This document shows, one piece after another, positions 19,876 through 43,700 of a DNA stretch of 64,000 nt; position 1 is the stretch's first letter, and every line of letters begins with the position of its first letter. The position numbers and the translations under genes were made by a program. The notes under the pieces are model-generated. The model saw only the letters and a program-made list of their open reading frames with translations, was not told the origin of the DNA and made no database searches. This stretch comes from Fimbriosthenelais zetlandica (Eukaryota), in assembly GCA_977030845.1 (NCBI GenBank), contig OZ365113.1, forward strand, positions 39,556,001 to 39,620,000, written 5' to 3'.

Positions 19876-21982
19876 TTAAACCGATACACCCGGACAACCC
19901 CCATCCTGGTGTTTAAGTAGTAACGACATCCGAGAAAATGTTTTTGAACAGTTTCTGCAGTTGTACTTCTTAATGTCTGTGTGTGTCTGGAGGTGGGCCC
20001 TCAGGTTGGACCTGTCAGCAAATGACCTTCCACAGTGACTACACTGGAAGGGCTTTTCACCTGTATGTGTTCTCACGTGACCCTGGAGGAGCCAGGGCCT
20101 GGAGAAGGCCTTACCACACAGGTGACACTTACAGGGCAGGGTGTGGGTGCGGATGTGCATCTTCAAAGCTCCCAAACTCACGTAATTCTTCTCACAGAAT
20201 TTACAACTGAACTGTTTCTTTATTTGGGAGACACAATGAAACTGTTTGTGTTTGGAAAGTCCACTGAATGTGGCATAACTCTTGTTGCATGCCTCGCATT
20301 GGTATCTGGGTGGGTTCATCGTCCTTCTCGGAGGCTGTTCTTGGCTGAAGTCGATGCCTAGGAAAGTCACTGGTGCACGACTGCGATCTTCACCCCCAGT
20401 CTGTCCTGAATTGTTGCTCCAAGGTCTGCATAGGGATTTCTCCTCTCCCGACTTCACTTCCTTCTTCATTTGTGTGTTTTTCTCCCCATTGACTCCAAGC
20501 TGACCAAAGCCATTCATACCTTTACATTTTTGTGAAGGATCCACATTTGACATCAGTTTACTGATGCTAAACATACCTCCACTTTGGGTATTTGAACCAA
20601 TGTTTGGGCTAAACAGTGCCTTTGGGTTGCCTTGGGTCTTTTGGTTCATCAGGACAACATTTGAATGAGTCTGTTCCGCTGGAGAGGCATTTCTCCATAG
20701 AGCTGATTTGGTCGGGATTCCATTTATAGAGGCATGGGGAGAAGAAAACAAGGTTGATCTTCCACCATGGAAAATATCCACCATTGCAGGATGGGCAGGA
20801 ATAGGTCTAAACACCTGTGGTTTGTGGGGAATAACAGGTCCCCATTTTCCAATGGAATGAGGAGCTTTAATTGGACTTGTCCCAGCTCCTAAAGGACAAC
20901 ACCGACCACCGTGACTGTGGTAGCCATTAAGTTCCTCACCCACTCCGCTGTATGTCGTAGATAACATTGGGTTACTACACAGAGAATCCATTAGCAGTGG
21001 GCTTTGTTGCTGCTGTTGGAAATTAAAACCAAACCTTAATGCATCTTTGGGTATTTCTCCAAACCCAGATGACCTTTTCACGTCACTGATTGTTGGCTGA
21101 ATCCCTAAGAGTGTGGGTTCTCTTCCATTAAAACTTCTCATGCCCGTTGTTCCCCAGGACACGCTGGAGACTGGTTGATCCGTACTGGTCGGCCCTGGAG
21201 GGACACACGGCCTCGGTAAACCGAGAGCGCCGGGAGGAGGGGCCTTGGGATCCGGGAAAGCTGCTTGTGGTGGTGGTGGTGGTGGTGAAGGCGGGGAGGG
21301 AGGAGAAGCGATGGTAGCACCGGTACTACCAACAGGTGTGGCAGGTCTCTGGGGGATACTGGTACCCCGAGCAGGCAGATGTAGGTTACTGGGTTTATTC
21401 TGTGGCCCTTCTTCCTTCTCCTCCTTCATTTGTTGTCCTTGAGCTGAAACAAAAAATGCAATAAATGTATCTTACAAATCCAAGTGGATCACTAAGCTCT
21501 TTTACCTTTTGTTATGGAAGAAAAAATCGCTACTTTAATCATGTTGATTTTCTGGCCTAAAATTATTTGCACAAGCAGGCCTGACAAAACCTCCTCCATT
21601 ATAAGAGACCAATTAAGGTCTTTTTTTAACTTAACTTAGGTGTGCATGTACCCATTTCTAATTCGTGAAAATAATTAATTTTAAGACTGTCATTGAAATC
21701 TAAGATATTTTTTCAACAAATTTAAATAAAGAACTTACTTTGGGTTATACACTGATGGCTCAGTTCCTTCATGATGGCAACATTTCTAGCATTTTCACAC
21801 TCAAGGGTAATCAACGTGGGGACCGAGATTTCTTTTATTCCACTGTCTCCTCCTCCTCTGCCAGTATTTTGTTCTTCTCCAGGCTGCGACCCAACACTTT
21901 CCCCTGATGGTGTCACTGCTCCACCCCCGGAGATGCTGTTACTGCACTTCACCTTGTTCTTGATCAAAAAAGCTCGCGGCAT
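19876..21982 (-). CDS. snail: Snail-family zinc-finger transcriptional repressor, paralog B; complement(join(19876..21443,21739..21982)), 603 aa
   Basis: ATG at 21982 encodes SNAG-like MPRAFLIKN. Donor CAAA|GTAAGT (intron from 21738). Acceptor TTTTTTGTTTCAG| ending at 21444. The phase-1 junction gives ACT, then QGQQMKEE, in frame with ORF 19876..21429. 244+1568=1812 nt. Five Snail-type fingers at 19894..20304. Confidence 0.95.
19894..20304 (-). other. Five-finger Snail zinc-finger array of paralog B
   Basis: [24 protein letters not shown] ... [15 protein letters not shown]. Confidence 0.95.
21444..21738 (-). other. Phase-1 GT-AG intron of paralog B (295 bp)
   Basis: GTAAGT donor, T-rich/CAG acceptor, in-frame junction. 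Confidence 0.9.
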
Positions 21983-22629
21983 TTTTATCTAGACTCTCTC
22001 CACTGGTAAATAGAATGACAAAAGTCTATACTGGCAAATACCAACTGCAACAGTAACAACTGGTCGAGTCGTTGATGATGAGCTCCGTGCAGGTGTCTAA
22101 CAAAGTTTTTGGAGTGTTTCTGACTCCTATCAGGTGGTTTTCCATCTAATCCCTTGCGTCGTGATATACAAATAATGTTAGGAATCCTCTGCACAAGTCT
22201 TTTGTCCATATCTTATAAAATCCGAGTCATTTGATATTGATATCAATTGATATGGATACAATTTAAAAAACACATAAATATTCTGCTGACAATAATCCGA
22301 TCGAAATTATTTGATGCTTCTAGATGAATGGTTTCATGCCCTTTTCTTAAATGACGTTTGATATGATTCAATTTCCGATAATTAATAATATCATGAATGA
22401 GTGATAAAAGTTAGTAGTAGCGCAGTGTAGATGACCTATTTACACTGGATCCTGATAAGCAGTTCAAGCAGTGTTGAAAGTATTGAATCAATGCTGACAT
22501 TTCCCGAGCAGCTCCCACTTAAAGTCCCTGAGACTGAGCAACTCAATGAGCTACTTGATATGGTAATGAAGCCTGACTGAAGTTAAGCGAGCATGATATG
22601 TATATGACAGCAGAATGGGTGAAGAAGTA

Positions 22630-23060
22630 TCAGATCACCCCCTGGTGAGCTAAGGGGTATATACACCTCTAGCTCCCCTCCAGCTCTCAACCCTGGAGAG
22701 ATAGACACTCACACACACACCTCTCACCACAAAACCTCAGAAGAAAGCATCCCCTTGAACAGGCGCAGGTGTATGCCAATGAACAGCTACACTGACTCCC
22801 AACACCCCAACACACAGGTCAATATTCTTACATACATACTCACATCACCTGTGGGGGATAAGTCAAGAGCTTCAGTATATAGAATGTACTTTGTCCACAA
22901 ATCAATCCACCAATCCACACACTTAGATCTGTGCTTTGCCCCGCCCCCTAAACCATGCCCACAGCCACTCATTTTTGCTCGGAGCAGCTCTCCCCCTAAA
23001 CCCTCTGCCCTCCTCATCTTTTGAAGCCCTCACATTGCTGTCTCGACCAGAGCAGGTGCA
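22630..23060 (-). promoter_or_regulatory. Candidate promoter/proximal regulatory region of paralog B
   Basis: C-rich block with TATATA near 22658, GC box CCCCGCCCCC near 22939, CCAAT-like motifs and three E-boxes (22766, 22846, 23053). An alternative TATAAGA lies at 22211..22217, so the TSS is ambiguous. Confidence 0.35.
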
Positions 23061-26000
23061 TTGGCAAAAGATGGTCGTGTTTACGTTCACCCCCGACATC
23101 GCCAGAACAGACACCTCTCTGAAGTTTCACCGAAGCTAATTACTTTTTGGCAAAGGCCACCGAATACAGCCTCGGTCGCCTTGTTCCCTTCAAAATTTCT
23201 CCTCCATGGATACTGCTACATGTGCGGTGATAGATATTAAAAAACGACAGGCAGGGCATCGTTGACATGCTTTTACACAGTCAGGACCAAACGCTACGAC
23301 CTTAACATGTGAACATCTCTAAAAGATCGCTGCCACAAATGTTTTTTACGGTGGCAAGGATTGCATAGTTTATTACCTTGGGATTCGTGTACGTGTATAT
23401 ATTATGAGTCATTCATGACACAAAATTAGTATTTTGACTTGTGTCTGTCTCAGGAGCCCTGGTACGATTTTTGTTATGTCACCTGGGGACTATTAATCGT
23501 CCATGTGCACGTTGCGGATATTGGAAGAATTCCAGGTTACAAAACACCATTTCAAGTCCATTAAGGGCAGGGATGTAGGAGCACGCGGATGTTTAAGCAT
23601 AATGATATTCTCATATAAATATAAATATATCTGTATACGGACTTCAATATTCTGCAGATATATATATTTGATATTTGAAAATATGTAGTATAATGCATGT
23701 CTCTTAATTTTTGAGAATACCAAATTGCGATAAAAAATACTTTCTAGAATTTACAGCTCGACGTACGACTTTCATGAAATTGCAAACAAACGACTTAAGA
23801 TGTAATTTCCTTTTATTTGATAATGAAAAATTGGCATTTCTTTATAAATCTGATTGCATAATTGAGAAATATTGAAAAGTATTTGGAATTTGTAGATTCC
23901 TTTTGCATTTATTTTATACGTATATATGTAGGGCGACAACTCTTTAGGATTTCTGATCTTTCTTCAACAATGTCACTCTCTGAGTCTTCACAACCATTGC
24001 AATCTGATACACCCACAACCTTGTCTATATTTACAGGAAACCTCTACAACAATCTTCTCCATCCGCCACCCATAAAAACTCATGAGAATTACCACCCGAC
24101 TATTTATAATTAGTAGCTTGGCTAGAGCCCACAGCCAGCGGACCAGTGACTAGTCAGATATATAAGGCTGGTGGGGATTACTTAACATATATATTTCTTT
24201 CATATTTCCGGATAGATAAATGTCATTGTGATCATAGGATAGGACAACTTTTTAATCCAATCTAATCCGTTCTGAACATCCCTAATTTTATCCATTTCTG
24301 TATTGGAACCTGATGTTCATTCCCCTCCCCCCCCATCTTTTTCATGAAAAAATGTGTCAATTCCCTTAGCCAAAAAGGGACAACCAATACATCTACCGAT
24401 TATATTTTAGTATCAAACCCAGTTGACTTTTCCATTAGTACTTCCATTGCCTTTCCCTCACTTGCCTGAGGACAGCCATGCCCGAGGCTCCTCTGGACTG
24501 ATCTCCTGGCAGCTGAGTACTAGATGCACCGGTAGTGATAAAGACAATACCTCAAAATACCCACCACCTGCTGGACCTGCTCTAGCCCCTTCCCCTTCTC
24601 TCCCACCTCATCACTCCCTATAACTCTCATCCTCTCTTTTCTCCCCAACCACTACAGCATATCAACATTTATCATCTTTGCCATCTTTATTGCTTTTGAC
24701 GGAATTGCTTTAATTTTTAGCTTTTCATTTGATATCCTTACTCTGCTCTCTCTTCCTCTTCTGCTCATAATGACTCAGAGTCGTGCTGCTCACATTGTTC
24801 TATACCCGTCCCGTCTCCTGCTCCCCTCCCCACTCCACCTCGCTTGTTTTACCTGCCATGGAGCGACCAGCCTGTGGCATGGTTTGGTGGAGGAGGGGTA
24901 TAGTGGAGGAGCAGCAGGTCCAGCTGGCAGGTATCAAGGTGTGCTGCTTCCTCCACCAGTCACTGCTACAGGCCGTGTAGAATGTGATAAGGTGCAGGAG
25001 TCGTGTCTGTACTCCCTCAGATGGCCGGGGATAGGTGAGGGTGCAATGGCGGTGAAAGCAGGGTTGATGAGCCATTTAACTTTGAGTCAGTGCCAAAAAA
25101 ACAACTCATGAACCTGTTTAAGTTTTTACAGCGATGGCATGAAATTCGTTTGGGCGGCCTTTGTCCGGAAAGGGGATGTTTTTATTCGTGGCTTTTCCAA
25201 GTCCTAAAGGCAGGGATTAGTCATGGCGATAGTGAAAATGTTCAGGGAACTTGCAGGAGAGAGAATATGTGTAGAAAAGTCCCAAGGCAAATATAGTTCC
25301 ATCAGAGCGAGGTAGCCTACCCATCCATTATGTTACCAAATGCCGTATTGACAGCAATGTTACATATATAACTTCTGAATGGCAGCTTTAATTAGTATGT
25401 TTCAATGTACCTGTCTACACCAATGGCGTCCTGTTTGTGGTAAGTGGGGGTTTCCTGTGGATTCTACACTGAAGCAGATGTAATACATATCTGTAGGAAG
25501 GCCTTGATTAGCATATACCTGCACGTCAACATGTGGATGTCGGCATACATAAAAGACCAAATCTGCATAATCTTATTACACCTGAAATCCCGCTTCTTCT
25601 CATCTCTCCCGCCTACAGGCATGCCAAAACAAAGAATCTATACTGATTAACGGCTCTCATAATAGTTGATTAATTGCTACCTCCGGTTTCAATGTGGGTA
25701 GGAATAAAGGAAGGCCGATGGAAGCTGGGCTAGCAGTATGGAAATGAGAATTTCCCCCTCTCCCTTCCGTCCCGCTATATCAAAGCTATAGGTGCGGTGT
25801 GGGGAAGGTTTAAGACAGGTGTACTATTGGGCTGGTCTGATTATGTGGGTTTTTAATGCCCGCTCGCGATGTGGAAATCGCATATAAAACAGTTAGAACG
25901 GGAATTACAACAAAAAGTACCTCAATGACCCGCATCAATGGAATAATGACATGCTTAAATCGGGTGCTTTCCTCCCCTTCAAAGATGATTGAGTTACAAT

Positions 26001-29000
26001 TGCACATAATCACATTGTGCGCTCATTTCATTAGGTATGCTCAATCTAGCCCTCCCACTGGGATGGGTTTGCTTTGATTCTTTGGCTACCGAACGATTTC
26101 AAGGTATTTAACACCAATTATTTAGTTGTATGTAAATCTATCGGAGATTATTCAAGCATCAACTCCAGACTGGTTGATGGTTGTTGAAGGGGAAATAAGT
26201 ACCGATAGTCTAATTCAATGAACGCGTTTCATAGATGAATTAATTCCTATATGTTACCTCAATTGTTCATTTTGGAGTTTTTCTATGTACCATCAGGGTC
26301 TGAACAAAGTTTCATTACATAAAAGCTATATTTCTTACAATAACGGGATAATTCTCAGCATAATTTGAATTCCGACGTTCTACGAACTTGTCCGAATTCC
26401 CAAGCATTTCAGAAATACCATTGAATATTTTCTCAGATACTTTTTACTTCTTGAAGTAACAGAATTCCCAGAAATTCTCAAATAATTTCTGTCCACGTCT
26501 CGTGTTAAACAGCTTAAGTTATTGACAAACAGCAACAACTGATGATGAGAAACCTGAACTATTCACGATGAAAACAAGACTTGAGTTGAGAGAGTTTGGC
26601 TTCCCAGGCACGTGCTTGCTACAGGCTCCCCCTGCCTGATAGTTATTCCAATAGGAACAAGAAAGGCACCTAAGATATCACCATCCTCCTCTTTTCAACC
26701 ATTCAATCAGTTCTTTGTCTGTCCGACTGGTATGCCATTGAAGCGTGAGAAGATGCTTTGATGACAGAAATCAGAGAAGACAAAAATGGAAAACAGAACA
26801 TGTTATGTACACATACATGCATTCATCTTTCATTTGTGACATTTAATTTCCATGACTTCTTATGGATGCTTTTCCTATCTCTTGCGTGCTGAAACATGAT
26901 GCTTTTGTTATGAGGGAAAAGGCAAAGTGTTATGGTCTTGGAGGCATATGCTTTGAAGGTTTATGAATTGTCATTGGGCTGGCCTTTTCACACCTTTTCA
27001 TTGACTCGACAAAGACCTGCATGACAGCAACCTTTCTGTTTAACTGTTGAGATTGACGAATGGGTCAGAAATCAAATGGCTATAGATCTATAGCTCAGGC
27101 CAGTATAATTATATAAAGAGTTAAAACATCAAGGTTTTTACCTTTGGCCGATTATTCTTCAGCTGAAATTCCAAGCATATAGAAACATGGATTGTGTTAT
27201 ATTATTATCATTCCCCAGCCAGCATTCATTCCCCAACCTACTTCTCACTGACGTACAATTACTCCACACACGAGTTGACAGACCACCCTTCATCCCGAGC
27301 CTCACATCTTATACCCTCAAAGCACCCGTCCATGGAAAAAAAACCTACCAAAGACAGGATTAACTCCCTCTGTTTTGGTTAGCCTAATCCTTTCGTATTA
27401 TCACCGATAGCACCCTACACAATTTTTGCACATGCTTCTTGCCCTCAAAGCGTATTAACTGTGATTTATTTTGTTGTAAAGAACGAACCAAGAAGAAAAG
27501 GATGAAAGTTGGGCCACAGCGCCGCTCACGGGTTGCTATAGAACAAGTGGGGCGGATGTTTACTTTGACCTCATGTCAATCAACTTCCGGAAGAAGGTGT
27601 ATCACGTGGCCTTAGTCCCTGACAAGGATTTTACAATCTTTGAAGATACTAAAACAACCAACTCTCCGGGTAGATTTTATGTTCTCGACATCACCCGACA
27701 ACATCTTACATATTTCTCTGAAATATGGTTCCTGTCCCCGCCTTTCTCCCCGTCTCTCGGCATAAGGAGGCCATTTGTATTTTTGCTGTGAAAACATCGA
27801 AGTAAATATGATTTATAACTGTCCAGTTATACCTGTGATCGATAAGTATGTTTTCAATGCGAGCTCATGGAAATATGGAGCTAGTCACTTGTGTGCACTA
27901 ACTCGAGGTAAAAAGTCAACAAAAAAGAAAAATGTTCGTAACTTGTATCTTATATATCCTTGAAGTTTTTCTCTGGTTGTATAAACCTACAGGATTTGTT
28001 TAGGTTTTCCTCGGGAATAAGAAAACACTTTCAGGATATTCACTTGGTGAATATGGAATAGCTTTACAGTAACATATTGGGTGTGGACATATATTTATGA
28101 GTGTTAATTTCTTCCTTTGTGCATGACTGAGGCATTTTCATTCATATTGCCTATCCATACATGACAATACAAAGTAATATTCACAATCATTGAGGTACAG
28201 GGTGGCCTTCCCTGGGGGGATTACAGGGTCTTTATGTCACCCACTTGTCCTGATTTCACTATTCAAGAGAGAAAAACAAAAGACTAGATACATGTCAAGT
28301 GACCATATTTATAACGCATGCGTAAACTGTCCTGCAAAAAAGCTGCTATAACCTCCACATGACTGCTCAAAGAGAAACGTTCACAGGCTGGATGTCACAG
28401 CCATGCATAGATAGCATATGCTCGCCATGTCATTTCTACATGAGTATACATGTAGAACATGTGGTGTGGAACAGCAGGGAAGCGTGCAGTCACAAGCAGG
28501 TGCTTTGATTTCATTTTGAAACAAGTTCCCTTTAATGTTAATTGCTCAGTCAAAGTAACTAATTGCTACTTTGAACAAAGCATATTCCTGAATTATATCG
28601 ATAGTATAATATTTTCGTAGTAACCGATTTTATCGCAATATTACTGAAAGCAATACGTGTAACGCAATTGTGACTTAATGAGCTCTGGTCACAGATTTAA
28701 TTTTTCTCCCAAAAGATGAAAGTACCCAAAACTGATTAAAAATATAACAATAAAACATAAAACAATTATTATTATTCTACGACTGAGAACCCCCTGTTTC
28801 TGTCACATACAAAGTTGGTGTAAAGTCACCCGCTCCACTTGATTTATAAGGGTGCAGAGACTCTATCGGGGTTAAATGTTTACTTTAGTCCGAGGCCTTT
28901 ACCTTGCCACTTCCCACCCTGGGGTCATCTATACCTTCGCCTCAGTCATTGCCCTCAGGTGACAACAGAAGGTCCAATTATCATGTAATGACCTTCTCAT

Positions 29001-31599
29001 AGAAGAGTCACCTTATGTCTCAACTCCTCCTACCAAGACCTTCCATCTGAACTAAACCTGAACAAAAAAATCTATTAACAAACCTGAGTATCCTCAACTG
29101 TAACAGTTATGCAAGGATTATTTCCACAGCCAGCATGAGGTCTGCTTATAATTGACTAGCTAGAAAGTTAATCATGCCCAATGCTTTAAAATGTCTACAC
29201 CAAACACGCCTCTTGCACTGAGCTGCAGAGCACTTTGCAAAAAGGCTGGCAGTGAAAGACAATGCTTTACCTCTCCAGGCTAATTGAGTCTGACACGCAG
29301 GTCTGCCCACGTTTGGTCCAGGTGACTCTCCCTGGCCCTGGGCCATGTATAAGAAAGCCTCTGCTATGTGTGGCGGCACCTGGTGAGGCTTGACATCATC
29401 TCCGTCTTGGATCTTATCTTCTACTTCCTCACATAGAGCAGACCACAAGATTCAGGTAACAGGTTACCTTGAGTGCGATATCAACCATGCAAAGAAGGCA
29501 CTGATTGTGCGCAATATAAGAATGTGACCCTTTTAAGACCCTTTGTATATTGATGGGATGTCATTGATATAATGCACTGTGAAGACATCCCCATTAAGGC
29601 TGACATCCCCATTAAAGAAGATGCGAAGAGAACCCCATTAAAGCTACATGAAAGTACAAGTGTTTCGCAAATGTTTGAAGATACAATAAAGAGAAAAATG
29701 GGTACGTGTTTTGAAACCAGACTCATCAATTCCATCATAAGTCATTGACATTAAAGCCCACACAAACTCCTACTTGTCAAAACACAAACCATGTGCTCTA
29801 TGGGGTTCTGTTATACCGCCTGAGGACTGCGGCTGACCACGGGCATATTTAAACAGAGGGGCACCCTCACCACATTTACCTGACTGGCCATAATGTTCCT
29901 TTCAAACCCCCAAAATGACCGTATACAACCTTCACCATTCAAACACCCTCCACCATTCTCCCCTCTCCCTCTCTCTCTCCTCTCCCTGGGGCCTACTCTG
30001 TATGGACCAACAACTTCATGGTCGGCTGCACATCCCTATACCTACAGCCACGCGCTTTTCATTGTGGACTAACTTGGCACAGCTTAAAGTGCAGTCATTA
30101 CTGTCCAACCAAAACCTCTAAGTACTTATCCACACCAAAGGGAGCGTCTTAGGTTGTCAACACCACTTAGGCCAAGGTTTTGTCCATAGATATTAGCGAC
30201 TACCCTACCCTTCCATCGCCAGACAATGGGTCCATCGGAATTGATATCCTCAGCATTATTCCCACATATCCCATTCCAATAATCACTCCTTACTCCCTAC
30301 CTAGAAAATAATGGGCCATATGATACAAAGGGCTGATCGCCATACCCGGAACTGTCAAAAGGAATATTAGACATCATCTATACATTTCACCAGGTACATG
30401 TAGCAGGGTTGGTGAAAGGCCGACTTTTCCTTATCACTGTTAATCGATATACCCGTATTTGCAAGGTTTTGGAAACAGACAAATGGCTTTAAGATAAGGG
30501 AAAAGGCAGTTGTTGCATTATATTCTTTTCCATATTAGAAACATATAGATACAGCTGTGGTGCAATCTGCCTAAAGTAGTGGCAACAAAGCCACAAATTG
30601 TTGCAGATTGCATTTCGTAGTCAGAATCCATGGTCCAAGGCACGCGTTGTACAAAGAACATAAAGAAGGGTGCAATCACCAATTGAAAATGCCACTCAAA
30701 TCAGCTCTACACACATTGGTGTATGTCGTTCTTGTATCCTTTTGCCTATAGCCCCTGGCTCTTACCCCAGATTATGCCATCTGCAAAGAACCGACTTACT
30801 CTTTAAGCAGTGATTCCTGTTTGGGATAAAGCATGAGTGCAATACTAAACCTAAATCCCAAACACAAATATATGAAAGTTGGGGCTTTGTCAAGGCCACT
30901 ACAACTTGGGACATCGGACTTGGGGTTTTCGCCGCAGCATCGTGGTCATTGAAGACCCCACTGGTGCTTTAGGGATAGGACACTGCATAAAGGCATCAAA
31001 GGCTATCAAGGGTTTGTAGGAGTTGATTCTGTATTTACAATATTGACCATTATCAAAGGATTTGTCTCTAATAGGGAAGAGGGTTTTATAGGGATTCACA
31101 CCTTTAAACATCTGGGGTCTATAGAATATGAAACCCTCTAGATGGTGATTTCCCTTGTGTGCTTTATGAAGGTGATGGGGACGGGGATCTGAAGTGTCCT
31201 GCTGCACAGATGCATCACTTTCCTGTAGTTAGGTATCTCAATAGTGTCGTATATTACCTGGTGATTCTTCAATAGATTCTGTCAAACGGAAACATGAGAC
31301 CTTGCCCATCTCAACTGCCCGAGTTGAAACATTAAGAAATTCAACTTGAACACACGCTTTAGAAAGCCATGGAAAGAAAGATGTGTGTAATAACACTCCA
31401 CAAAAAAGGCTGTAACATGATACGAATCTGTAGTTCCTCATAATTCACTTTGAGACGTGTTGTTCAGATATTTTTTTTTAAAGAATTGCACAGTAGTGAT
31501 TTCATCCATATATTTTTTTTATTGGATGTAACTCTTTCAACTCACAACAACTGATAAATGAAGAGAAACCTGACAACAATCTGACCCCGTCCCTTAACC

Positions 31600-31991: not shown

Positions 31992-32045
31992 GGTGGGGTG
32001 GGCAGGGTGGGAGGAGGGGGTGGGGTGGGCAGGGTGGGAGGAGGG
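31992..32045 (+). repeat. 27-bp G-rich tandem duplication GGTGGGGTGGGCAGGGTGGGAGGAGGG x2
   Basis: Two exact copies, multiple G3-G5 runs. Confidence 0.85.
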
Positions 32046-35000
32046 GGAGGGCCTGGGGAGAGCTCCCTAAAGAGTAACACTCTTATCCACACACCAACAA
32101 CCACAGTAAATTAGAGGTATTTACACTGCCGTATTATTCCCGACTAAATCTTGATAGAAATGGATGTGAATGCAACAGGGTCTTGTAAATAAAGGCGCCT
32201 GCTTTGTGGTGCAGGTAAATTAAATGTCACAGTGTTAAAAGAGCCCATAGAATGAAGGGACGCTGTAGAGGTGCATCTTTAAGGGGCTAATTCTTATGTA
32301 ACTGACACCTTTTATTTGCGTCAGAACTGGAACTTACATCCCTTTGCAATATTAGAATCTTTGGCAACCATAATACAACAGTACTAGCGATATATCTTGT
32401 ATATATACAAGAACACATCTTTCGCATATTAAAAACATTTATTCGCTTAGGAATTCATTTATTCCAGACTAATTTAATCCGAACTTCAAAAGTAAAAGGA
32501 ATGCTTCCAGATTTAAGATTTACATGTCATGAATATATGATGAGGCAAACCTATTTTTTTCTAGATGAAATCTACGTTCATTTGTTGGAACGATGCCACA
32601 AAATGCACAATACTATTCCCGGAATAATAGTCCCAAGGAAGTGTATAGGTTTAAGTAGGTTTCTCTATTATGGGAACCAACAATAATTCAAAAGATCCGC
32701 GAACTAGAATATTTAATGAAGCGTTCTAAACCTGTAGAATACCTGTAGATTGTTGGCAGGTTTAGCCTGTTGTACCCATTGACCCTGTGTACCTTTTTTC
32801 TACGGACAAAGCTTTAATCAGATTAGCCACAGAAAGAGAAAGATGCATAAGAATGTCCTTTAAAAAGAGAACCAAGCCTCCTCATCTTTTCAAAGAGTTC
32901 TGCTGAGGTATTGAGAAGTTCTGCTGGGTGGGGGTCAAACAATTGGGGGCGTTGACATGTCCATGTTGGACACGATGGTCAGTGATGCTTGGCGTGAGGA
33001 GTGACCAATACAACATGAGCCTGGTCATGCCTGATTAACCTTAACATGAATACATGCACCATGTTCATAGAAATCATGATTAGAGTGCGCTCCCTCTTGG
33101 CATGTTCCTGGTGGACAACTTTTCCTGAATCACTCAGGTGTTGGGCTTGAGGGCACTGACCTCTTATATAGCTCACTGACCACTGGTCAGCAGTGGACAA
33201 AGGCAGGCTTATTGCTGTTATGAAATCATAATGGGCCATACATATGTGCTTCATGGAAGGAATAATGTTCATTGCATGTGTGTCTGTGGCACTGGCCATG
33301 ACCAATGGTCAAACATGGAATCTCAAGGCAGTTTCCTGGCACTCCTTTGTGTCCAAGACATTTCCAGATGACCAGAGCTCAGACGCGTCCCGCCCATGAA
33401 ACACGAAGAGAAATATAATATGCGCGTCCATTAAATGAAGTATGAAATCATACACCAAGCAGTCCGTGAGATATGGACCTGTGCCTCTAATATTGACCAC
33501 TGCATGGAAACTTTGAACTCTGTTAAGGCCTCGATGGACGCAGGTATGCTGCTGAGACTATCAAAGGCCCTCCACAAACCCTGAACTCTGAATGACTGAT
33601 TGGAAGGGACCATAGGCCTAATTAATATCCTAATCATAATGCCCCTACTGAGTCAAAAACATCCGCGACCTTCTGTGTTTAAGGACTTAATTATATAATT
33701 TCAGTTGTTAAAGTCCCATGGAACTTTGAAGCCTACTTGAAAGGAAAGCACAGACTCTTTTAGCCTGCGGGGGATTTCAGGTTGATGATCAGCGCACTAG
33801 CATTAGGAAATAAGCTTTTCTAAAGCCCCCACATGGATATCTGACCATTAGGACCTTTTCGCTGTTTGTGGTCTGACCCTTCTGCCATAAACCACTGGTA
33901 TGCCAAACGCTCCGCATATAATTCACTAATCTGAGTATTAGCACTAATATATAGGTACATCGAGTGTAATCACTACCCACCAACTGTTACCCTCGCATGT
34001 TTCCTCCATGTTTAGGTGTAGGGGTTACCGCTATGGCCCTATACGGCACATGATGCATGAGCACGGAGCATGAGGGTATGGTCGACTATAAATGCAATAT
34101 TCAACCACTTTTCTCACTGAGAGAAAAAGTTTTGGACAATTAGTATAAGGGGAAATAAGAATTAAAAAATTTGTAATTGATGCAAGTTAACTGGTTGAAA
34201 TATATATTCCGAAGTCGGAGCAGAATTTATGCGCTGGGAATCATTTAAAAATACGGTACAGTAAAGCTTTACAATACCGAAATAATTTCTTCGATTAGAG
34301 ACATTATTAGCCCAGCCTATCCATCTATCGGGCAGAAATTAAATTCATAGACCACCATGCAATAAATCACGTTGACAATACAATGGAAATTAAAGATGTA
34401 ATCATACTATCAGTTTCAATGGCGATCTGAATTCACTGCGGTTCATAATGGACCACATCTATTGTAAGTGTCTCGATAAATCCGAGGGCTGAAGGGGAGG
34501 AGAAGGCCAGAGAAGGCAGAAGGGCTACTAGGAAACTTAAACATAGACTTGTGGTTTGGGGCTAAATTTCAGGTGGGACGGACCTGTGGCAGGGCCCACC
34601 TGCCCATGACACGCATCGTGCGCGCGCAGCTCCCCCACCCACCCCTTTCCATCCCTAAATTCTTATATTATCGCCCAACTTGCACGCTTCAGTGTACAAC
34701 AATGGGTAGGGAGACGCAGATGGCTAGGGCGCTTGCTGGAATGGTGCGCTTGCGCACTATACAACTTGTTGAGCGTCCAGTGGTTGCCATGGCACCTGCG
34801 TTTTTAAGGTGTAAACAGCCCAAAGAAAAACGAAAAAAAATATATTGAAGGACTCCAAACCCGCATCTTGTATAATAGGGCCATTCATACTGAGAAATGT
34901 GAGTGGAGATGATGTTTATTACTGTGTTATGTCGTTGGGTTTATCTGTAGGTGTGTGTTTACAATGGGTGTAGGGCTGTGCCAAAAAATCACGCCTCCTC

Positions 35001-37358
35001 TTGGGTAGATTGGTCTGAGCGGGAGAAAGGTGCATAGATTGCTATCCACCGCGGAACTGCTGTCGGCGGATAACTGGGCAGGCCTATGTTATATGAAGCC
35101 CCTATCGGTAGAACGAGGTTTCTTAATTTTAAAGTTCAGAAAAGCATGAAGCAGCATGTATAGGCGATATATTCAAGCGTTCTTTTTTGCATATCATTCA
35201 AAGATTTTGGTTTGGAAACTGAAATATCTTTTTGACCATAATATTTTACAGCTTCTATTCTCTTCTATTGTTAAATCTTGCAAAGTTCTTTTGTGATGCT
35301 TTTGTGAACATTTGTGGATTGAAGGGAATTACACACTGTCAATGTATGAAGGGTGATTATCAGGCAATTTAAAGGGATTGAGATTATAGGGGTATTATTG
35401 ACCCTCGTTTACGATTCCTCACTCCCGTCTCAAATTCATTTCCAATCCACACAAAAGACAACAGAAGAAGAGGAGTGTGTTAAGTAGGGAGGCCAAATAT
35501 GTACTTTTCTTTTCTCTCTCGCCGCAAACAACCTTGTAAACACCACCGAGAACAATTGAATTACGCAGAATATATCACAGAACCTGTTAGAATAGGCGGA
35601 CAATAGGCCGCTTAGAGTCCCATCTATTGTTACTCATTTCTCAGATGTAGACCTAACCATCGTTTGAAGTGGGGGAATGACGTAAGTGACAGACGCTATC
35701 TCCGCTGTCCGCTACCTCAGCAAAGCGACCTCTTGAAAAGATTAAACAGAGCTCGTTATTCCCACACCAAAAGACGAGCCAAATAAGGGGAAATAAATTG
35801 GCCAAATTATCTTCCTGTGAAGGATACCGCCTCGCTTTCGCAGCGCCTTGCCGTAAACCGGCCTGTTACGACACCAAAGTGAATCCGACGATTGTCAACA
35901 GGTGTCGCGACAGTGTGCGCTGCAAGGCCGGGAGAGTAGTATACAGGAAAGGGGGGTTCGGGGTTCAGTTTGGGAGGGAAGGGCCAGATGCCCTCTTTCT
36001 TTTGTAGGCCGTCTAGACTCCGCCCCTTTTGTATAGATATAGACGGGGGTAGATAGGGGTGAAGGCTATATGTGGGGTGTGGGTGGGGGCTAGGGAGGTA
36101 GTAATCCTGGTAGAAAGTCTGGGAGGAGTGCAGGTTTGGCAGTGACCACCTGCCCGGTTCCACACCTGTGCATATATTAGCCAGGCTCCGAGGCCCTTTG
36201 TACCTGCCAAACAATGGAGGTCACTCATGTGGAACTGGCGCCGGCAGGTTTTCATGGAAGGCCAGGAAATGCCAAGAAATGCGCCAAAACATAACGATTT
36301 TTCAGTCCCGCAAGACCGCTTCTCCCTTCCGCGACAGATGACTGCACTACATAATATTGAATAATAATGAATGCAATATTCCCAAGGAATGAGAATATCT
36401 CATTAAAAGGGCCAATTGGTGCCAGAAAGTAGCTCATGCATTGCTCAATAGTAACCAAATAATGTCACTTACTTATGGAAATTGAAGTTAATGTGTTGGT
36501 TTCGAAATACAATTAAGGGATAATAAGTAAGTTGAAAACTATTATAGAAATATTAGTTTCGTCTCTCATGCAATCCTTATTATACCATCATGGCAAACAT
36601 ATGTATACTAATTGCAGTAAGTTTGTAATATTGAAATTATTAGAGCTACAAGGCTCCCACATAAGCCATATTTCCGCAGTATCCGAGAAAAAACAGCAAC
36701 TTATTTACAGGTATTTAGATATCCTATCCGTTTAAGGAAAACTTCAATGATTACAGCCTTAAAGATTAAATATTGACATAAGATAAATGAACAAGTTTGG
36801 ACCTTATCAGGGACAACCAGCTATAGCACAGACAGTCGATATCAGCTGGCAATACTTAAGCACTTGAACCATTCTCAATGTCAACATACTGAATAAAGTC
36901 CTTCACACGGGAACTAAATGTGCGTTCAGATCCCAAACCATTAAAAGGCAAGCAGGTGATGTGATTGGAGAGAGAGTGGGTTTTATACTTTATCAATTGA
37001 GGCGCGTCGGGTGGTGGGATATAGTTCGGGGCACTTCGCGGCCCGGCCAGATGATGTGTATCGAGGCTGGTGCCAGCCTTTGTTCCCCTCTACTTGTTGA
37101 TATTTGGCATGACACGCACCTGCCTATTTCCTGGATGCCTGATAAGCCCAAATGCATTCTCATATATAAAGTGGCATTATAACACACACAGGAGGTGTGG
37201 TTTAGTGATTGGAATGATATATGATTGTACATGGCAGCAGTGTATTATAATGTACGTATAGGGGAGGGGTGGGGTCCCGGGGTGGGGTAAAGTGGGCGGG
37301 AATGATCACCATATCAATACCTATGCATCATTGCATGGGGTAGGAAGGGATAGTGGGT

Positions 37359-37379
37359 GGGGGGGGGGGGGGGGGGGGG
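37359..37379 (+). repeat. Poly-G tract (21 G) in a G-rich block
   Basis: Direct count; homopolymer length may be uncertain in the assembly. Confidence 0.85.
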
Positions 37380-37936
37380 ATGGGTGTGGGTATTGGCACG
37401 CGTCAGGTGGTCACAGATCATTAGTATGAACTTGGCACGGTCCTGTTGATTATCAGGTGCTTATTAGCCTGGAAATCTACCCTCCTTATCTACCTTATCT
37501 ACCTTGTCTTCCAGGTATAAGAGGTGATTATATTCCCCGCCCTTACTGCCCACCTCTCACGAACGTCCGGGCTCGGGTCGGTACAAGTCTCCAGATAGGC
37601 CGGCCTACTTAATTGATTTGAAATATATTGAGCACTTTACGCAGATATGCGGGTGTTCAAAAAGTCTTTCATTCAGACTCATTGATTTTCCGTCTTTCAC
37701 GATATGAAATGTAGAAGAATGTAGGCTTTCTTTAGTTGTACGCTCCAATAATTATATATACCCCCATGTGACAGGGAATCATTCTGCAATTTAGGCCAAA
37801 TATCATGGAAAATTGGCCTACATATGATAATAAACAGGGCCAAATGGGAAGTCCGGGATTCTTTTTTTTTTGTTCACAAGGCGAATAGGCCCAACTTGAT
37901 TTAAAAGGAATTTTAAAAGACGTCTGGCTACATGTA

Positions 37937-38016
37937 CAGTCTGTTCACTCTAAGTTGATCCGAAACCACAGTAAATGCATGGTGGTTTCGGTAACTTAGA
38001 GTGAACAGCTAGACTG
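37937..38016. mobile_element. 80-bp Tc1/mariner-type mini-element (TA-CAGT...ACTG-TA)
   Basis: Left arm CAGTCTGTTCACTCTAAGTTGATCCGAAACCAC pairs with right arm GTGGTTTCGGTAACTTAGAGTGAACAGCTAGACTG, with two small indels. Flanked by TA at 37935-36 and 38017-18. Confidence 0.7.
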
Positions 38017-40005
38017 TATAAACTTCAATGCCTACACATATTGTCCCATTTATATACTACATGGGAAAGTCTCTTTGAATTTCAATATGCATCTGGCACG
38101 TCGTTACGTTGCTACCGTTGACGACGTGTATCCAGGATGCGTCCAGTGATTGTTTTTCACGCCGTCACGGCCCGGCGTCAGGCGTATCGCTAATCCCCAA
38201 ATTCCGCTCCAATTTTCCCCGCGAAAATGTTGTCCCAAGTTATAGAAAACGAAGGCAATCCAATGTCCCATTGAAGGCAGGGGGTAAAAGTTTTGAACTG
38301 GGCAGAAAGCTTGGTTAGAATGACAAGATAACAAGATGTAGGCCTTTAAGAATTACGCACGGCATTGATTCAGAAATGAAAATCCAATCCACTTGGAAGA
38401 TCGTGATTGAGGCTATTTTTTTTCATTTTCTAAGCCCTCACTTTTCAACATTTAGGTTGAAATGTTGAATAAGTTTATTCAGGGTAATTTAGTGTATATT
38501 TGATTGTTGATAAAAGCACAGATTTATTTCGTCCCTATATATAGGCCTATATATTGAACAGACGCAGTAAGTATTTAACTCTATTTTATTTAGGCCTAGA
38601 TATATATATAGGCCTATATTTGTATCCCTTGAATTAAATGGACTTTTTAAGACATGAGTTAGACATGAGTTCCAGGTGCCGGTGAACTTGTCACCAACAA
38701 GTGTTTTATCAGCCTCTCGTTGGCAGAAGGCGGGTATCAGCATTTGGTGCCTTATGGCACTTCCCCTTCCATAATGCCGAGAAATGACGTCCCTAGAACA
38801 ATATGGCTCAGCAGAAGGAATTCTGACATCGCTGACACGTCATCAACATCGTCGCGCGCACACACAAGCGAGTGTCATCCTTCTTCCCGGCAGGTGAGGA
38901 ACGAGATGCCATGAAATGCCATAGAAATCCGAGAAGTGCCCAGCCTGACGGCAGGTCATCGGCACGCGAGCTCCCGTTGTCTCGCGAGAATCCAAGCGAG
39001 ACCTCCGGTCATCAAAGTACATCATCTGGCGTTGGTCTCGTGCCGCTCTACTGCGCAGGCGCGGCCGCACGTGCCACAATACTTCCGTTCAGGTCTGCTG
39101 CGCGCGCAGTTTGAAAAAGGGGCCTGGGAGAGGACACAATAGAAAGCCCCCATCGGGGACAGGGGGGCAACTGGCTAACAAGAAGTGGGCGCTATATATA
39201 CATATAGGGGTATTAGAAAGTGGGGTGCGAGGCACATGCATTGCTTGTATCGAAGGGTGAGAGAAAAGGGGGTGATACTTAGTGGAGGGCTTCGCACGAC
39301 AAGGGGGATGGTAAAGACATATACACACCAGCTGGTTATTCACCCAGCTGGATTCTAGTCAACCCAAAGCATAATAAAAGTCCCGTTGTCTGCCCCTATG
39401 GGGTGTCAACCCACCCCGTTATCATGGATTGTCTCCATATCAATCAGTGATAAAGTTCCCACACCCCGTCACCCACCAAAAGGTCACAGTCCCATAATGG
39501 TTGTATATAAGTCTTTCTAAAAGCCTTCTATTGTTCGTATTGTGTGGCGGTCATTAAGACAATGCCTATGACATCCACATGTTTCCCTTATACCTCTATA
39601 AGTAAATTAAAAGCGCGTGACACGATGGCTCGAGGGGCCAGATGATAAACTGAAGGGAGGTGTCATCATTCTGATACTGCCTTAAACCAATACCCCTCCC
39701 CATCCCCATCCCCGGCAGCATCACCCCCTACCCAGCATCAGCAGCAGCATCTCTCCCATCTCCCCATAATAATTGTTCCACACAAAAATGTCAACTGAGA
39801 CAAAGCAACCTTATAGTGGAAGGTTGTCAGGTGTTATGAGCTATTGCCAGGTGTAGCTCCTGCTTGACACGCGCCACTCTCCCGTTTTGTATCCTATGGC
39901 TTATCTCTCCACTCAATGAAGCTTACTGACTAACCTCTGGCATTGTCATATATATGGCCATTAACCCCAGAGTTAGGGGTTAATCTCTTGGTTAAAGGGT
40001 ATATA

Positions 40006-40718
40006 TTTATTTAGGAATACGGGAATACCAAGATGGGAATGCAGAAGTACAGGAGAACAGGCCTTGAAGGCATGCCCTTTGTATGGACCTGAATTATTCA
40101 ATTGGCATCGATTAGAGTAAAATGGTTTGGGTAGATGAAGTAAGATCGGGCAGTTAATATCAACAATGGTTCCCATTAAAGTAATAAGGCGCGGAAATTC
40201 TTTCTCAGAGAAAAGTACTTTTATTCTCCTGTTATATAAATATTATTTTATAACTACACCATTTGGAGGATGTAAAGAACTAATGAGATCCTTAACAATG
40301 ATAACTTACAACTTTTATCAAAGAATATATAACTGTATGCATGTAATGTGCAAAACAGCCAAACCGATCTAAAATGTAGCACGTGTGAGCATAAAACAAT
40401 CATAGCTTTGTTTTATATTTAATCAAAGGTACATTTAGTGTTTTCTCAGTGTGTATTATCATATAATTAGTGTACATATGACCAAACATATAAAACGATT
40501 GCTTCCTATAGAGCAGGAAAAAACAACTTTTCACGTCAACAGAGAACATTGCCTGGCTTACCCAACCATAACAATCATAAATATATGTGTGAAAACATAT
40601 CAAACACAACTTTGTAACTTGTTCCTGTTAGGTATTGTATAGTTTTTGTTAATGATATGTGTGATGTGTTGTGGAAGGTTTGCGTCATTCCTTTAATAAT
40701 GTTTGTTTGCAGTTTATT
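40006..40718 (-). terminator. Candidate polyadenylation signals of paralog C (AATAAA at 40713..40718, 40220..40225, 40006..40011)
   Basis: Three AATAAA hexamers on the minus strand downstream of the stop; which is used is unknown. Confidence 0.3.
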
Positions 40719-40770
40719 TGTTGGAAATGGTACACAATTTAAGTGTTCTTTGGCACGTTAATCACGTGGA

Positions 40771-43700
40771 TTACATGCTGTTAACGCATCCACCATCTTC
40801 ATGTTTCAAAAGCAATGAATTCCGTGAGAATGACTTTGAACAGTTTCTGCAGTTGTACTTCTTAATGTCTGTGTGTGTCTGGAGGTGGGCCCTCAGGTTG
40901 GACCTGTCAGCAAATGACCTTCCACAGTGACTACACTGGAAGGGCTTTTCACCTGTATGTGTTCTCACATGACCCTGGAGGAGCCAGGGCCTGGAGAAGG
41001 CCTTACCACACAGGTGACACTTACAGGGCAGGGTGTGGGTGCGGATGTGCATCTTCAAAGCTCCCAAACTCACATAGGTTTTGGGACAGTACTTACAGCT
41101 GAACTCTTTCTTAATAGTAGCTGTGCAATGAAACTGCTTGTGCTTAGACAGACCGCCATGAGTTGCATAACTCTTTTTGCATGCATCACATTGATATCGT
41201 GGTGGGTCATTTTCCCTGCTCTTCTTAGTAACCACTGCTCTGAAATCTGCCATATCCAGTGGGACATTCTCAATGCCCCAGGGGATCTTCGGCTTGATGC
41301 GCTCTCCATCTGTATCATCATCTTTCCATGATTTACTACCATTGCTGTCTTTGATGGCAGCCATATTGATGTGCGAGTTATGGCCGACATAGCCAGGGGC
41401 TACTGCATGGTACCTGCTCTCATATTGTCCTTTCTGGTAATCAGAGACCCGTGGTTCACTGATTTTCTGGGCGAGGGGAGCATTGGTGGAGGGAGACAGA
41501 CGCTCTGTGAGGAAGGATGGGATGGGTGGTGGAGGTTGGGGAGGAGATGGAGGAGACAGTCTTTGGTATCCTGGAGAAGAAGCTGGATCCAAGTCAGGAG
41601 ATGTCATTGCCAGGAAGGCTTCTGACCCGACAGAGGACGAGCTTCTGTGTGGTGTGTGTGGGAACCCCGGGGCCATTCTTGAGGCGTCCATGTATTGTTC
41701 TTTGGGAGAAACCTGTCGGTTTTGATCAAAAGGATAGGGGATAGACCGAGAAGGCTCCCGGGGCAATGAAGCTTCCTGAGGCAGAGCGGATTCTTGTTTT
41801 ATATCACGTATTTTGTAATGACCTGCAGGGGAAAACCTGCTTCGGTCCTGATGTGGAGGTAAATCAGGCGAGAGACTGAGCATGTTGTGATATGAAGGAG
41901 GGCTAGGGAAAGGCCTGTAGGATCTCTCTCCATAGAACCTTTCCTCATATGTCCCACTAGTGCCATAAACGTCTTCAAAATGAAGAGGTTCCATTTCCCT
42001 GTGTGGGGCCCATATTCTGGATCTGCCATACTGGGCATGGGTAGTCGAGTAGGGAGGAAGTCCATGAGGGGAACGCGTTTGTGGTATCGGCCTGGATGTT
42101 GTAGGTGACCTTGGCCTCAGTGGTGATCTTGACCTCAGCGGAGACCTTGACCTCAATGGTGACCTTGTGAGAGATGGCCTTGACATTAGAGGTGATCTTG
42201 ACCTTGGTGGGGATGAATGCCTTATTGGTGACCGTGAAGGGAAACTTGGTTGAATGCCTTGTGAAGGGAAACTTGGTTGAATGCCTTGTGAAGGGAAACT
42301 TGGTTGAATGCCTTGTGAAGGGAAACTTGGTTGAATGCCTTGTGCTGGGGGCGGGGATGGATAGTGAACCACCTCCCCGGGTGTTTTCTCAATGGTGATC
42401 TTAGTTCCATTCCTGGTAGATGTTATGTAACCAATAGCTTTCAGACCACTGGAGGCAGGTACTGCAGGTGACCGGTAACAGGCCATTTTCTCTGGCTCCA
42501 GGGCAGCGTCCGGAGATGTTTTTCCCATGCCTTGGATGCTGAAGGCTGCAGGTACAAGCCCCTGAGGGGGCGTTAACTTCAGGTTCACGCTGTCGTTCCC
42601 ATACCTTCCTTCTCTGCTTTCCTCTGATCTTCCACCTGAAAATCACAAGAACAAAACCATCAGGTGAGTCAGTACAAAGGACGGGACACTTGTAACAAGG
42701 CTTGGCAGGTGATGCCGTCAAAGACAAGGCCTCTTGGATGGAGGCTATGCTTCCAGCCATTAGCATTATTAGCGCCTCGAGACCTTTCTCAAATTTGTGA
42801 ATTTTCTTCAGGCACTTATTCAAGGAATTTCGGCATCGGATTCATTGTTGTTTCTTTTGATGATCTAATTTGCATTTATTTTTGCCAATGGGTACTACAA
42901 GTTTCTCTTGATAGTAAAAGATTTTAAGATGCTTGAAGGACTCTGGTTTTATATGAATAATTAATGGGAAATAATGTGATTTGATGAAATGGTCAAATGC
43001 ACTTAAAGTTGACCTACGTAGGCCTGCCTACTAAAAGAGTTGAACCTTTTCCATTTTAGTTTGGCTCATAACTACTTAAAACCCAGATATTATCAAATCA
43101 GTGTATTTTATGAGTGATCTATGGAGAGTTTCCAAGTCTACTTGGTTCAGACCAACTACACTAGGTGGCAGGATGTGTCCGCGGAAGGCTAGCCCTCCAC
43201 CTGAATGTAAATGAGTGAGGGATACTCGGGTAGTCGGTGAGGAAGGGACTGGGAGCCAGGTCTCTGCAATGTTATGTTCTAAATACCACCCCCCCCCCCC
43301 CTCCTATCAAACCCCATCCCCTCACTCCACCACCCTCCCCCATCACCTGACGGGGTAGGGTAGGAAATGGTCACACTTGAGCAATTTTATCCCCTGCTTA
43401 AACCTGGCGTCAGTCAAGAGGAACCAGACAATGGGGCCTGGAAATAGTAATGACCGGTCACTGAAAGGGCCAGGAATAAACCAGGAACAGTGGTTTTGTT
43501 ACACCGGGGGAACCCTATAAGCCCCTTTACTGATCTTTGTAATACAAAAATTATGGCATAAATAATAAATAAAATAAAAAATGAAATTATTTTTTCCTAT
43601 ACAGGAGAGAAAGTTATCATATAGATTGAAGCTGGCTCTATAATGACATTACACATGTAGTCTCAGGGATCTCCGCCCCCCCCCCCAACCAGTAGGCCTA

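What the first reader, a model, noticed from the sequence alone, without database searches (positions are those of the whole stretch)
19943..41073. 238/239-nt identity between the finger DNA of paralogs B and C: gene conversion confined to the DNA-binding domain
Seen: 19943..20181 equals 40835..41073 (offset 20892) except at one synonymous site (20077 g vs 40969 a, His CAC/CAT). That is about 80 codons with one silent change. ZF1 and the ZF5 helix just outside differ at many silent and replacement sites, and the rest of the two genes does not align. The tract runs from the ZF2 recognition helix (VSLGALKMH) through ZF3 and ZF4 to the start of ZF5. Selection on the protein does not preserve third codon positions. 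Inference: recent or recurrent ectopic gene conversion keeps DNA specificity synchronised while effector regions diverge, i.e. domain-restricted concerted evolution.
Basis: partly seen in the sequence, partly recalled or inferred. Interest (0 to 1): 0.9.

Follow-up and report, generated by a model that had tools for sequence, protein, structure and literature searches.

The report
Gene conversion between tandem Snail genes
Three neighbouring Snail-type developmental regulator genes have recently copied a 240-base stretch of their zinc-finger DNA from one another, a well-known process (gene conversion) that has not, as far as I could find, been reported for this gene family.

Summary
Window 19943-20181 equals 40835-41073 at 238 of 239 bases, and the only difference is 20077 G versus 40969 A, a silent His codon.

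The window holds three head-to-tail Snail-family genes on the minus strand, called A, B and C here. Each has a SNAG first exon and five C2H2 fingers. Relatives carry orthologues of A, B and C, so the triplication is old.

- **B versus C:** silent-site difference is 0.02 inside the tract and saturated (0.97) in the finger DNA just outside it.
- **B versus its orthologue in another species:** the same tract is saturated at silent sites (0.81). This rules out constraint on the nucleotides themselves.
- **Control lineage:** another Snail cluster keeps almost the same amino acids there at only 79-80% DNA identity.
- **Permutation test:** 0 of 20000 shuffles reach the observed B-C run.
- **Site patterns and trees:** they switch from orthologue grouping in the flanks to paralogue grouping in the tract.
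- **Shared derived codons:** all three window genes share His CAC and Ser AGT where relatives have Gln and Ala.

Ectopic gene conversion is well supported. The idea that it serves to synchronise DNA specificity is not supported, because purifying selection already does that. No reads were available, so the assembly could not be checked. This is a new member of a known kind. The scan's first readers noted similar domain-restricted tracts elsewhere in this genome; those notes are untested.

The parts
19943..20181 (-). Conversion tract in Snail paralogue B (ZF2 helix, ZF3, ZF4, start of ZF5)
   Evidence: 238/239 identical to 40835-41073. Silent-site difference pS 0.020 inside versus 0.97 in the finger flanks. 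Permutation 0/20000.
40835..41073 (-). Conversion tract in Snail paralogue C
20077..20077 (-). The single B/C difference (silent His CAC in B, CAT in C). Paralogue A agrees with C here.
   Evidence: the A-C identical run extends one base further than the A-B run.
3067..3153 (-). Paralogue A, 5' sub-tract: 86 nt identical to B and 87 nt identical to C
   Evidence: Permutation: A-B 6/20000, A-C 3/20000.
3049..3066 (-). Divergent island in A (about 18 nt, several silent changes plus Met versus Val) between the two sub-tracts
   Evidence: A-type residue differs from B/C-type in the relative too (Leu versus Ile).
2947..3048 (-). Paralogue A, 3' sub-tract: 102 nt with one mismatch (2986) to B and C
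19876..21429 (-). Paralogue B, main coding exon (open frame, 517 aa, five C2H2 fingers at the C-terminus)
   Evidence: Best named homologues are spiralian Snail proteins.
21722..21982 (-). Paralogue B, first exon with SNAG motif ([10 protein letters not shown]). The splice donor was not mapped.
40771..42588 (-). Paralogue C, main coding exon (open frame, 605 aa)
   Evidence: N-terminal orthology to P0006, E 9e-30.
43865..44203 (-). Paralogue C, first exon with SNAG motif (MPRAFLVKK). The lower bound is the end of the open frame, not a mapped donor.
2851..4251 (-). Paralogue A, main coding exon (open frame, 466 aa)
   Evidence: N-terminal orthology to P0026, E 5e-42.
4410..4607 (-). Paralogue A, first exon with SNAG motif ([10 protein letters not shown])

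Best explanation
Three old, head-to-tail Snail-family genes lie 17.0 and 20.9 kb apart and have exchanged finger-coding DNA by non-allelic (interlocus) gene conversion. By inference, a break or heteroduplex in one copy was repaired from a neighbouring copy. This overwrote about 240 bp in B/C and two shorter pieces (about 87 and 102 bp) in A.

The tract sits where it does because ZF2 to ZF4 is the most strongly conserved protein segment. There, paralogues never drift beyond about 20-25% DNA difference, so homologous pairing remains possible. Outside it, the divergent ZF1, ZF5 helix and unalignable N-termini stop the heteroduplex.

Once started, the process reinforces itself. It has carried near-neutral substitutions (His CAC in the ZF3 knuckle, Ser AGT in the ZF4 knuckle) into all three copies.

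Shown: the identity tract, its statistical significance, the freedom of the silent sites between species, the topology switch, and the shared derived codons. Inferred: the molecular route (break repair or meiotic heteroduplex), the donor and direction, the number of events, and that conservation causes the tract placement.
For: -: 238/239 identity with sharp edges.
- B-C pS is 0.020 (1 of 50.7 silent sites) in the tract and 0.97 in the flanking finger codons. B versus orthologue B'' (L001) has pS 0.81 in the same tract.
- permutation gives B-C 0/20000, A-B 6/20000 and A-C 3/20000. In the tract, A=B=C differing from B'' occurs at 38 sites and B=B'' alone at 1 site. In the flanks, B=B'' alone occurs at 18 sites and B=C alone at 5.
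- the DNA tree of the flanks joins win_B with sp2_B (82/91) and win_A with win_C (92/94). In the tract, win_B and win_C are identical and the foreign orthologue sits on a long branch (0.42).
- N-terminal orthology A-P0026 (E 5e-42), C-P0006 (E 9e-30) and B-B'' (E 4e-12), so the three genes predate the species split.
- all three window genes carry His CAC and Ser AGT where B'' has Gln CAG and Ala GCC (three base changes for Ala to Ser), and where the relative's A', B' and C' have Gln and Ala.
- in a control cluster, near-identical amino acids in the tract (2-3 differences) go with only 79-80% DNA identity.
- GC3 is 0.65-0.71 in the tract versus 0.36-0.55 in the flanks and 0.53 in B''. This is weak support for GC-biased conversion.
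Against: - No sequencing runs were listed for this DNA, so read support for the two copies could not be checked.
- Only one foreign orthologue (B'') was available as DNA. The relative that has all three genes gave no DNA.
- Tree support is moderate (82-94) because the segments are short.
- The GC-bias signal is not significant (21 strong versus 17 weak differences against B'').
Confidence: 0.85

Rival explanations
1. Assembly or polishing artefact: reads from one copy were used to correct the other, which erased real differences.
For: Read support could not be examined because no runs were listed. A 239-bp shared stretch is the kind of place where short-read polishing can mis-assign reads.
Against: Polishing can only homogenise copies that are already nearly identical. 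It cannot turn the 20-28% difference seen between other Snail sequences with conserved protein in this tract into 0.4%.

A silent difference survives at 20077. Paralogue A shares the tract but keeps an 18-nt divergent island with sharp edges. The amino-acid states His and Ser are shared by all three copies with identical codons, and they differ from every relative.
Confidence: 0.05
2. Nucleotide-level constraint: the tract carries an overlapping element (RNA structure, regulatory site or antisense frame) that freezes silent sites.
For: An antisense open frame of 75 codons runs across the tract in B and C, and one of 65 codons in A. Silent sites are identical between copies.
Against: B versus its orthologue B'' is saturated at silent sites in the same tract (pS 0.81). 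A differs from B and C at about 13 silent changes within the tract. A control Snail cluster shows free silent-site variation with almost the same protein (2-3 amino-acid differences). The antisense frame follows automatically from the identity.
Confidence: 0.03
3. A recent segmental event other than conversion, such as a double unequal crossover or a chimeric partial duplication, replaced the finger segment of one gene in frame.
For: It would give the same identity tract with sharp borders. The genes are tandem and in the same orientation.
Against: Gene spacing and colinearity are intact. There is no duplicated flank and no junction. Three copies are involved, with different tract edges and an internal island in A. 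Short repair tracts explain that more simply. A reciprocal double crossover within 239 bp is mechanistically much rarer than a non-crossover conversion; this last point is established knowledge, not tested here.
Confidence: 0.05
4. Selection for synchronised DNA-binding specificity maintains the conversion. This is the adaptive form of the first reader's idea.
For: The tract coincides with the fingers that carry most of the DNA contacts. Paralogue A keeps its own residue (Met here, Leu in the relative) in an island that escapes homogenisation. That hints that selection shapes which pieces are accepted.
Against: Across more than 100 spiralian Snail proteins the tract differs at only a few positions. 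Control paralogues differ at only 2-3 residues there while showing many silent differences. Specificity therefore stays synchronised by purifying selection alone. The residues homogenised here are outside the recognition helices, which can be read directly from the sequence.
Confidence: 0.02

Closest known systems
Gene conversion in the homeobox of the linked Dlx pair of the annelid Capitella teleta (McDougall et al. 2011, PMC3199776)
   Same: Linked paralogous developmental transcription factors in a spiralian. Near-identity at the DNA level is confined to the DNA-binding domain. It was detected as a tract of about 150 bp by GENECONV, while other species' pairs show no such identity.
   Different: There it is two genes in inverted tail-to-tail orientation, a homeobox, and a tract that extends into an intron. 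Here it is three head-to-tail genes 17-21 kb apart and C2H2 fingers within one exon. The tract is longer (239 bp), a third copy is mosaic, and there is an orthologue-based test.
Interlocus gene conversion between tandem duplicates in general (globins, opsins, Hsp70, poly-zinc-finger clusters). This entry rests on established knowledge, plus PMC2724270 and PMC2604467, which were listed but not read.
   Same: Short tracts, dependence on proximity and on pre-existing similarity, patchy mosaics, and paralogues that look younger than they are.
   Different: In poly-ZF and PRDM9 arrays, conversion shuffles repeated fingers within and between arrays and changes specificity. Here the fingers keep their positions and the protein is unchanged.
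Snail family duplications in Metazoa (Kerner et al. 2009, PMC2688512)
   Same: Linked snail genes are reported in Capitella, Lottia and Drosophila and are read as relatively recent tandem duplications. ZF3 and ZF4 are the most conserved fingers.
   Different: That paper does not mention gene conversion or concerted evolution (0 occurrences). Here the triplet is older than a deep species split, yet its finger DNA looks new. At the protein level the full finger-domain tree still separates B-type from A/C-type genes. The effect on protein trees is therefore small in this case.

Membership tests
Snail family zinc-finger transcription factors | N-terminal SNAG repression motif (MPRSFLVKK-like) | tested here: met
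   [10 protein letters not shown] (A, from 4607), [10 protein letters not shown] (B, from 21982) and MPRAFLVKK (C, from 44203), each upstream of its main exon on the minus strand. Splicing of these exons to the main exon is inferred, not shown.
Snail family zinc-finger transcription factors | Five C-terminal C2H2 fingers with the Snail-type ZF3/ZF4 sequence ([18 protein letters not shown]) | tested here: met
   (Pfam zf-C2H2, E 1e-23 to 1e-27). One search aligns the fingers with Capitella Snail1, Lottia snail2 and Crepidula snail2.
Snail family zinc-finger transcription factors | Closest named relatives are Snail rather than Scratch proteins | tested here: met
   named hits at 78-86% identity in the finger domain are Snail1 (Capitella), snail2 (Lottia goshimai, Crepidula), SNAI2-like and escargot-like. 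No Scratch protein is among the 120 best.
Interlocus (ectopic) gene conversion | A tract of identity significantly longer than the surrounding divergence allows | tested here: met
   0/20000 permutations; pS 0.02 versus 0.97.
Interlocus (ectopic) gene conversion | Phylogenetic incongruence: paralogues group within the species in the tract, and orthologues group across species outside it | tested here: met
   site patterns; trees; N-terminal orthology; shared CAC and AGT codons. Only one foreign orthologue was available as DNA.
Interlocus (ectopic) gene conversion | Silent sites of the tract are free to vary where no conversion acts | tested here: met
   B versus B'' pS 0.81; control cluster.
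Interlocus (ectopic) gene conversion | Both copies are real in the organism (read-level support) | not testable with these tools
   no sequencing run was listed for this DNA.
Interlocus (ectopic) gene conversion | GC enrichment of converted DNA (GC-biased conversion). This is common but not obligatory. | tested here: inconclusive
   GC3 is 0.65-0.71 in the tract versus 0.36-0.55 in the flanks. Differences from B'' are 21 strong against 17 weak, which is not significant.

The most novel reading that the evidence does not exclude
Conversion among the Snail triplet may be long-running and recurrent in several spiralian lineages, with different partners and tract extents.

- In the relative, A' and C' differ at only 3 of 54 flank residues, against 8-11 for other pairs.
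- In a control cluster, the adjacent pair has patchy identity in the tract.

It may also be one instance of an unusually high rate of domain-restricted conversion across this genome. First-reader notes mention the SoxB2 HMG box, ABCE1 cores and PepT. If so, DNA-level dating of duplications of developmental regulators in this clade would be systematically too young, and some 'independent' snail duplications would be older shared ones.
Probability: 0.25. Interest if true: 0.55.

Novelty: new member of a known kind. Interest (0 to 1): 0.35.

Why it matters
This is a clean case of concerted evolution confined to part of a DNA-binding domain in an old triplet of developmental regulators.

It carries a practical warning. 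The finger DNA of linked Snail paralogues can look recently duplicated when the genes are ancient. Silent-site dating and DNA trees of this family should therefore exclude ZF2 to ZF4, or test for conversion first.

Protein trees are little affected here, because the tract is almost invariant in protein.

The case also gives a small natural experiment on how tract limits follow sequence conservation. The island that paralogue A keeps may mark a residue under copy-specific selection.

Tried and rejected
- **Read-level check of the assembly.** Two searches for sequencing runs (window 19500-21500 and 20200-21000) listed none, so read laying could not be used.
- **DNA of the relative that has all three orthologues** (contig of 581644 bases, proteins P0003, P0006, P0026). 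The look-up returned gene positions but no DNA.
- **The A and C orthologues in the second species** (contig of 804952 bases). I walked the contig to about 28 kb downstream and 11 kb upstream of B'' and found no further Snail gene by tblastn. A word-based search with the C N-terminus found only P0006. The same search with the A N-terminus found nothing. An exhaustive HMMER search with the C N-terminus found only P0006, plus hits to the proline/serine repeat.
- **Nucleotide-level constraint.** Rejected on the orthologue and control comparisons.
- **Codon bias as the cause.** Rejected because the flanking finger codons of the same genes are saturated.
- **The idea that conversion makes finger-domain protein trees group by species.** Tested and not found. 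B-type and A/C-type genes still separate.
- **Literature.** No paper in the searched library links gene conversion to snail, escargot or worniu.
Full report
**Observation**

On that strand the difference is His CAC versus CAT.

Identity in 50-nt bins at the fixed offset of 20892 is 1.0 inside the tract. It is about 0.7 in the adjoining finger-coding DNA and about 0.25 elsewhere.

A repeat search of the whole window found a third copy of the same 300-nt segment at 2885-3184, 86% identical to the other two.

**What the genes are**

The window carries three genes in the same orientation on the minus strand:

| Gene | Main exon | Length |
|---|---|---|
| A | 2851-4251 | 466 aa |
| B | 19876-21429 | 517 aa |
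| C | 40771-42588 | 605 aa |

- Each ends in five C2H2 fingers (Pfam).
- Each has an upstream open frame starting with a SNAG motif, at 4607, 21982 and 44203.
- The best named homologues are spiralian Snail proteins, including Capitella Snail1, Lottia and Crepidula snail2, SNAI2-like and escargot-like.
- The N-terminal regions of the three genes do not align beyond low-complexity matches.

**The triplication is old**

A related assembly (ENA, contig of 581644 bases) encodes three Snail proteins.

- Its N-termini match A and C one to one: A with P0026 (E 5e-42) and C with P0006 (E 9e-30).
- B is matched by P0003 through the B-specific linker and ZF1 ([21 protein letters not shown]). Its best N-terminal match is the B-type protein P0004 of a second species (E 4e-12).
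- N-terminal identity between orthologues is only 22-38%, so the species split is deep.

**Silent sites**

I aligned 138 codons from PPRYQC onwards and counted by the Nei-Gojobori method.

| Comparison | Region | Result |
|---|---|---|
| B versus C | tract | 1 silent change over 50.7 silent sites (pS 0.020), no replacement |
| B versus C | flanking finger codons | 33 silent changes over 34 sites (pS 0.97, saturated), 21 replacements |
| B versus orthologue B'' (L001) | tract | pS 0.81 |
| B versus orthologue B'' (L001) | flanks | pS 0.92 |

The silent sites of the tract are therefore free to change between species.

A control Snail cluster from an unrelated metagenome contig (L002, L007) makes the same point. 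Its paralogues differ at only 2-3 amino acids across the tract, yet two of the three pairs are only 79-80% identical in DNA. The adjacent pair is 88% identical, with patchy runs.

Across all pairs with 0-4 amino-acid differences in the tract, DNA identity is 72-80%, apart from the window's own paralogues and that adjacent control pair.

**Significance and phylogenetic switch**

I permuted the order of the 141 variable sites of A, B, C and B''.

- The longest B-C concordant run is 37 sites, and no shuffle out of 20000 reached it (the largest was 26).
- A-B and A-C reach their run of 17 in 6 and 3 shuffles of 20000.
- Inside the tract, the pattern A=B=C differing from B'' occurs at 38 sites, and B=B'' alone at 1 site.
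- In the flanks, B=B'' alone occurs at 18 sites and B=C alone at 5.
- A maximum-likelihood tree of the flank DNA joins window B with the foreign B (82/91) and A with C (92/94).
- In the tract tree, B and C are identical, A sits next to them, and the foreign B is on a branch of 0.42.

It rests on one foreign orthologue at the DNA level and on short segments.

**Derived states shared by the paralogues**

| Position | Window A | Window B | Window C | Relatives |
|---|---|---|---|---|
| ZF3 knuckle | His CAC | His CAC | His CAC | Gln in A', B', C'; Gln (CAG) in B'' |
| ZF4 knuckle | Ser AGT | Ser AGT | Ser AGT | Ala in A', B', C'; Ala (GCC) in B'' |

Ala GCC to Ser AGT is three base differences. 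Three parallel origins of the same codon are not credible, whereas one origin plus copying is.

**Paralogue A**

A matches B and C perfectly over 86-87 nt (3067-3153). It also matches over 102 nt with one mismatch (2947-3048). The two pieces are separated by an island of about 18 nt with several silent changes and Met in place of Val.

At the single B/C difference, A agrees with C. The B base is therefore probably a later mutation or lies at the edge of an event.

In the relative, the A-type protein also has its own residue at the island position (Leu against Ile). The island may therefore be kept by selection, or it may simply separate two events.

**Mechanism**

The best reading is non-allelic gene conversion among tandem paralogues. 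The tract length of 239 bp at most, bounded by mismatches on both sides, is in the usual range for conversion tracts (established knowledge).

Its placement follows protein conservation. ZF2 to ZF4 varies at only a few positions across spiralian Snail proteins. Only there do paralogues stay similar enough for pairing, and the divergent ZF1 and ZF5 helix end the tract.

The adaptive claim, that conversion synchronises specificity, is not needed. The control cluster argues against it. So does the position of the homogenised residues outside the recognition helices.

GC3 is higher in the tract (0.65-0.71) than in the flanks (0.36-0.55) and than in B'' (0.53). However, the direction of the differences is not significantly biased.

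**What could not be done**

- No sequencing runs were listed, so an assembly or polishing artefact is excluded only by argument. Polishing cannot create identity from 20-28% divergence. One difference and A's sharp island survive. The shared codons differ from all relatives.
- The three-gene relative gave no DNA.
- The second species showed no further Snail gene within the 40 kb I could reach.

**Comparison with what is known**

Conversion confined to the DNA-binding domain of linked developmental regulators has been described in a spiralian. The Capitella Dlx pair has a 150-bp tract (PMC3199776).

The main survey of the Snail superfamily reports linked snail genes. It infers at least ten independent duplications and does not mention conversion (PMC2688512). 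I found no paper in the searched library that links conversion with snail, escargot or worniu.

A protein tree of the whole finger domain still separates B-type from A/C-type genes. Conversion here misleads DNA-based dating more than protein trees.

First-reader notes on the same genome mention similar domain-restricted tracts in other gene pairs. I did not test them.

**Verdict**

The feature is real, the conversion reading is well supported, and the functional gloss is not supported. It is a new member of a known kind and of moderate interest.

Noticed in passing
window 12449-12527 and 12642-12720: Inverted repeat with 79-nt arms, 95% complementary, 114 nt apart, in the A-B intergenic region. 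It may be a small foldback or MITE-like element.
   Followed up: no
window 42067-42236 and the adjoining coding DNA of C: The N-terminal region of C holds short tandem coding repeats. One is an 18-nt period giving SPLRSR-type repeats, and the other is four copies of QGIQPSFPS. These repeats drew the spurious hits in the exhaustive protein search.
   Followed up: partly
proteins P0026 and P0006 (relative, contig of 581644 bases): In the relative, the A-type and C-type proteins differ at only 3 of 54 residues in ZF1, early ZF2 and the ZF5 helix, against 8-11 for other pairs. This could be conversion with a wider tract in that lineage or slow evolution there.
   Followed up: partly
L007 10001-11221 and 15528-16748; L002 10001-11056: A control Snail cluster from a metagenome contig (GCA_013332975.1). 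The two adjacent genes, 5.5 kb apart, are 88% identical in the tract with runs of perfect codons. Pairs with the third gene are 79-80% identical. This may be an older or patchy conversion.
   Followed up: partly
L001 14141-17723: A retroelement (reverse transcriptase RVT_1 plus a CCCH-finger frame) sits about 2 kb downstream of the B orthologue in the second species. A second contig (L006) carries a 99% identical copy of that gene with a 3-residue length difference and is probably the other haplotype.
   Followed up: no
window 19983-20210, 40875-41102, 2973-3170 (plus strand): An antisense open frame (75 codons in B and C, 65 in A) crosses the tract in all three genes. It follows from the identity, and there is no sign that it is used.
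   Followed up: no
window 20551-20571: An earlier first-reader note points to an eh1-like motif (FSISKLM) in B only. The peptide is present in the B open frame, but I did not examine it further.
   Followed up: no
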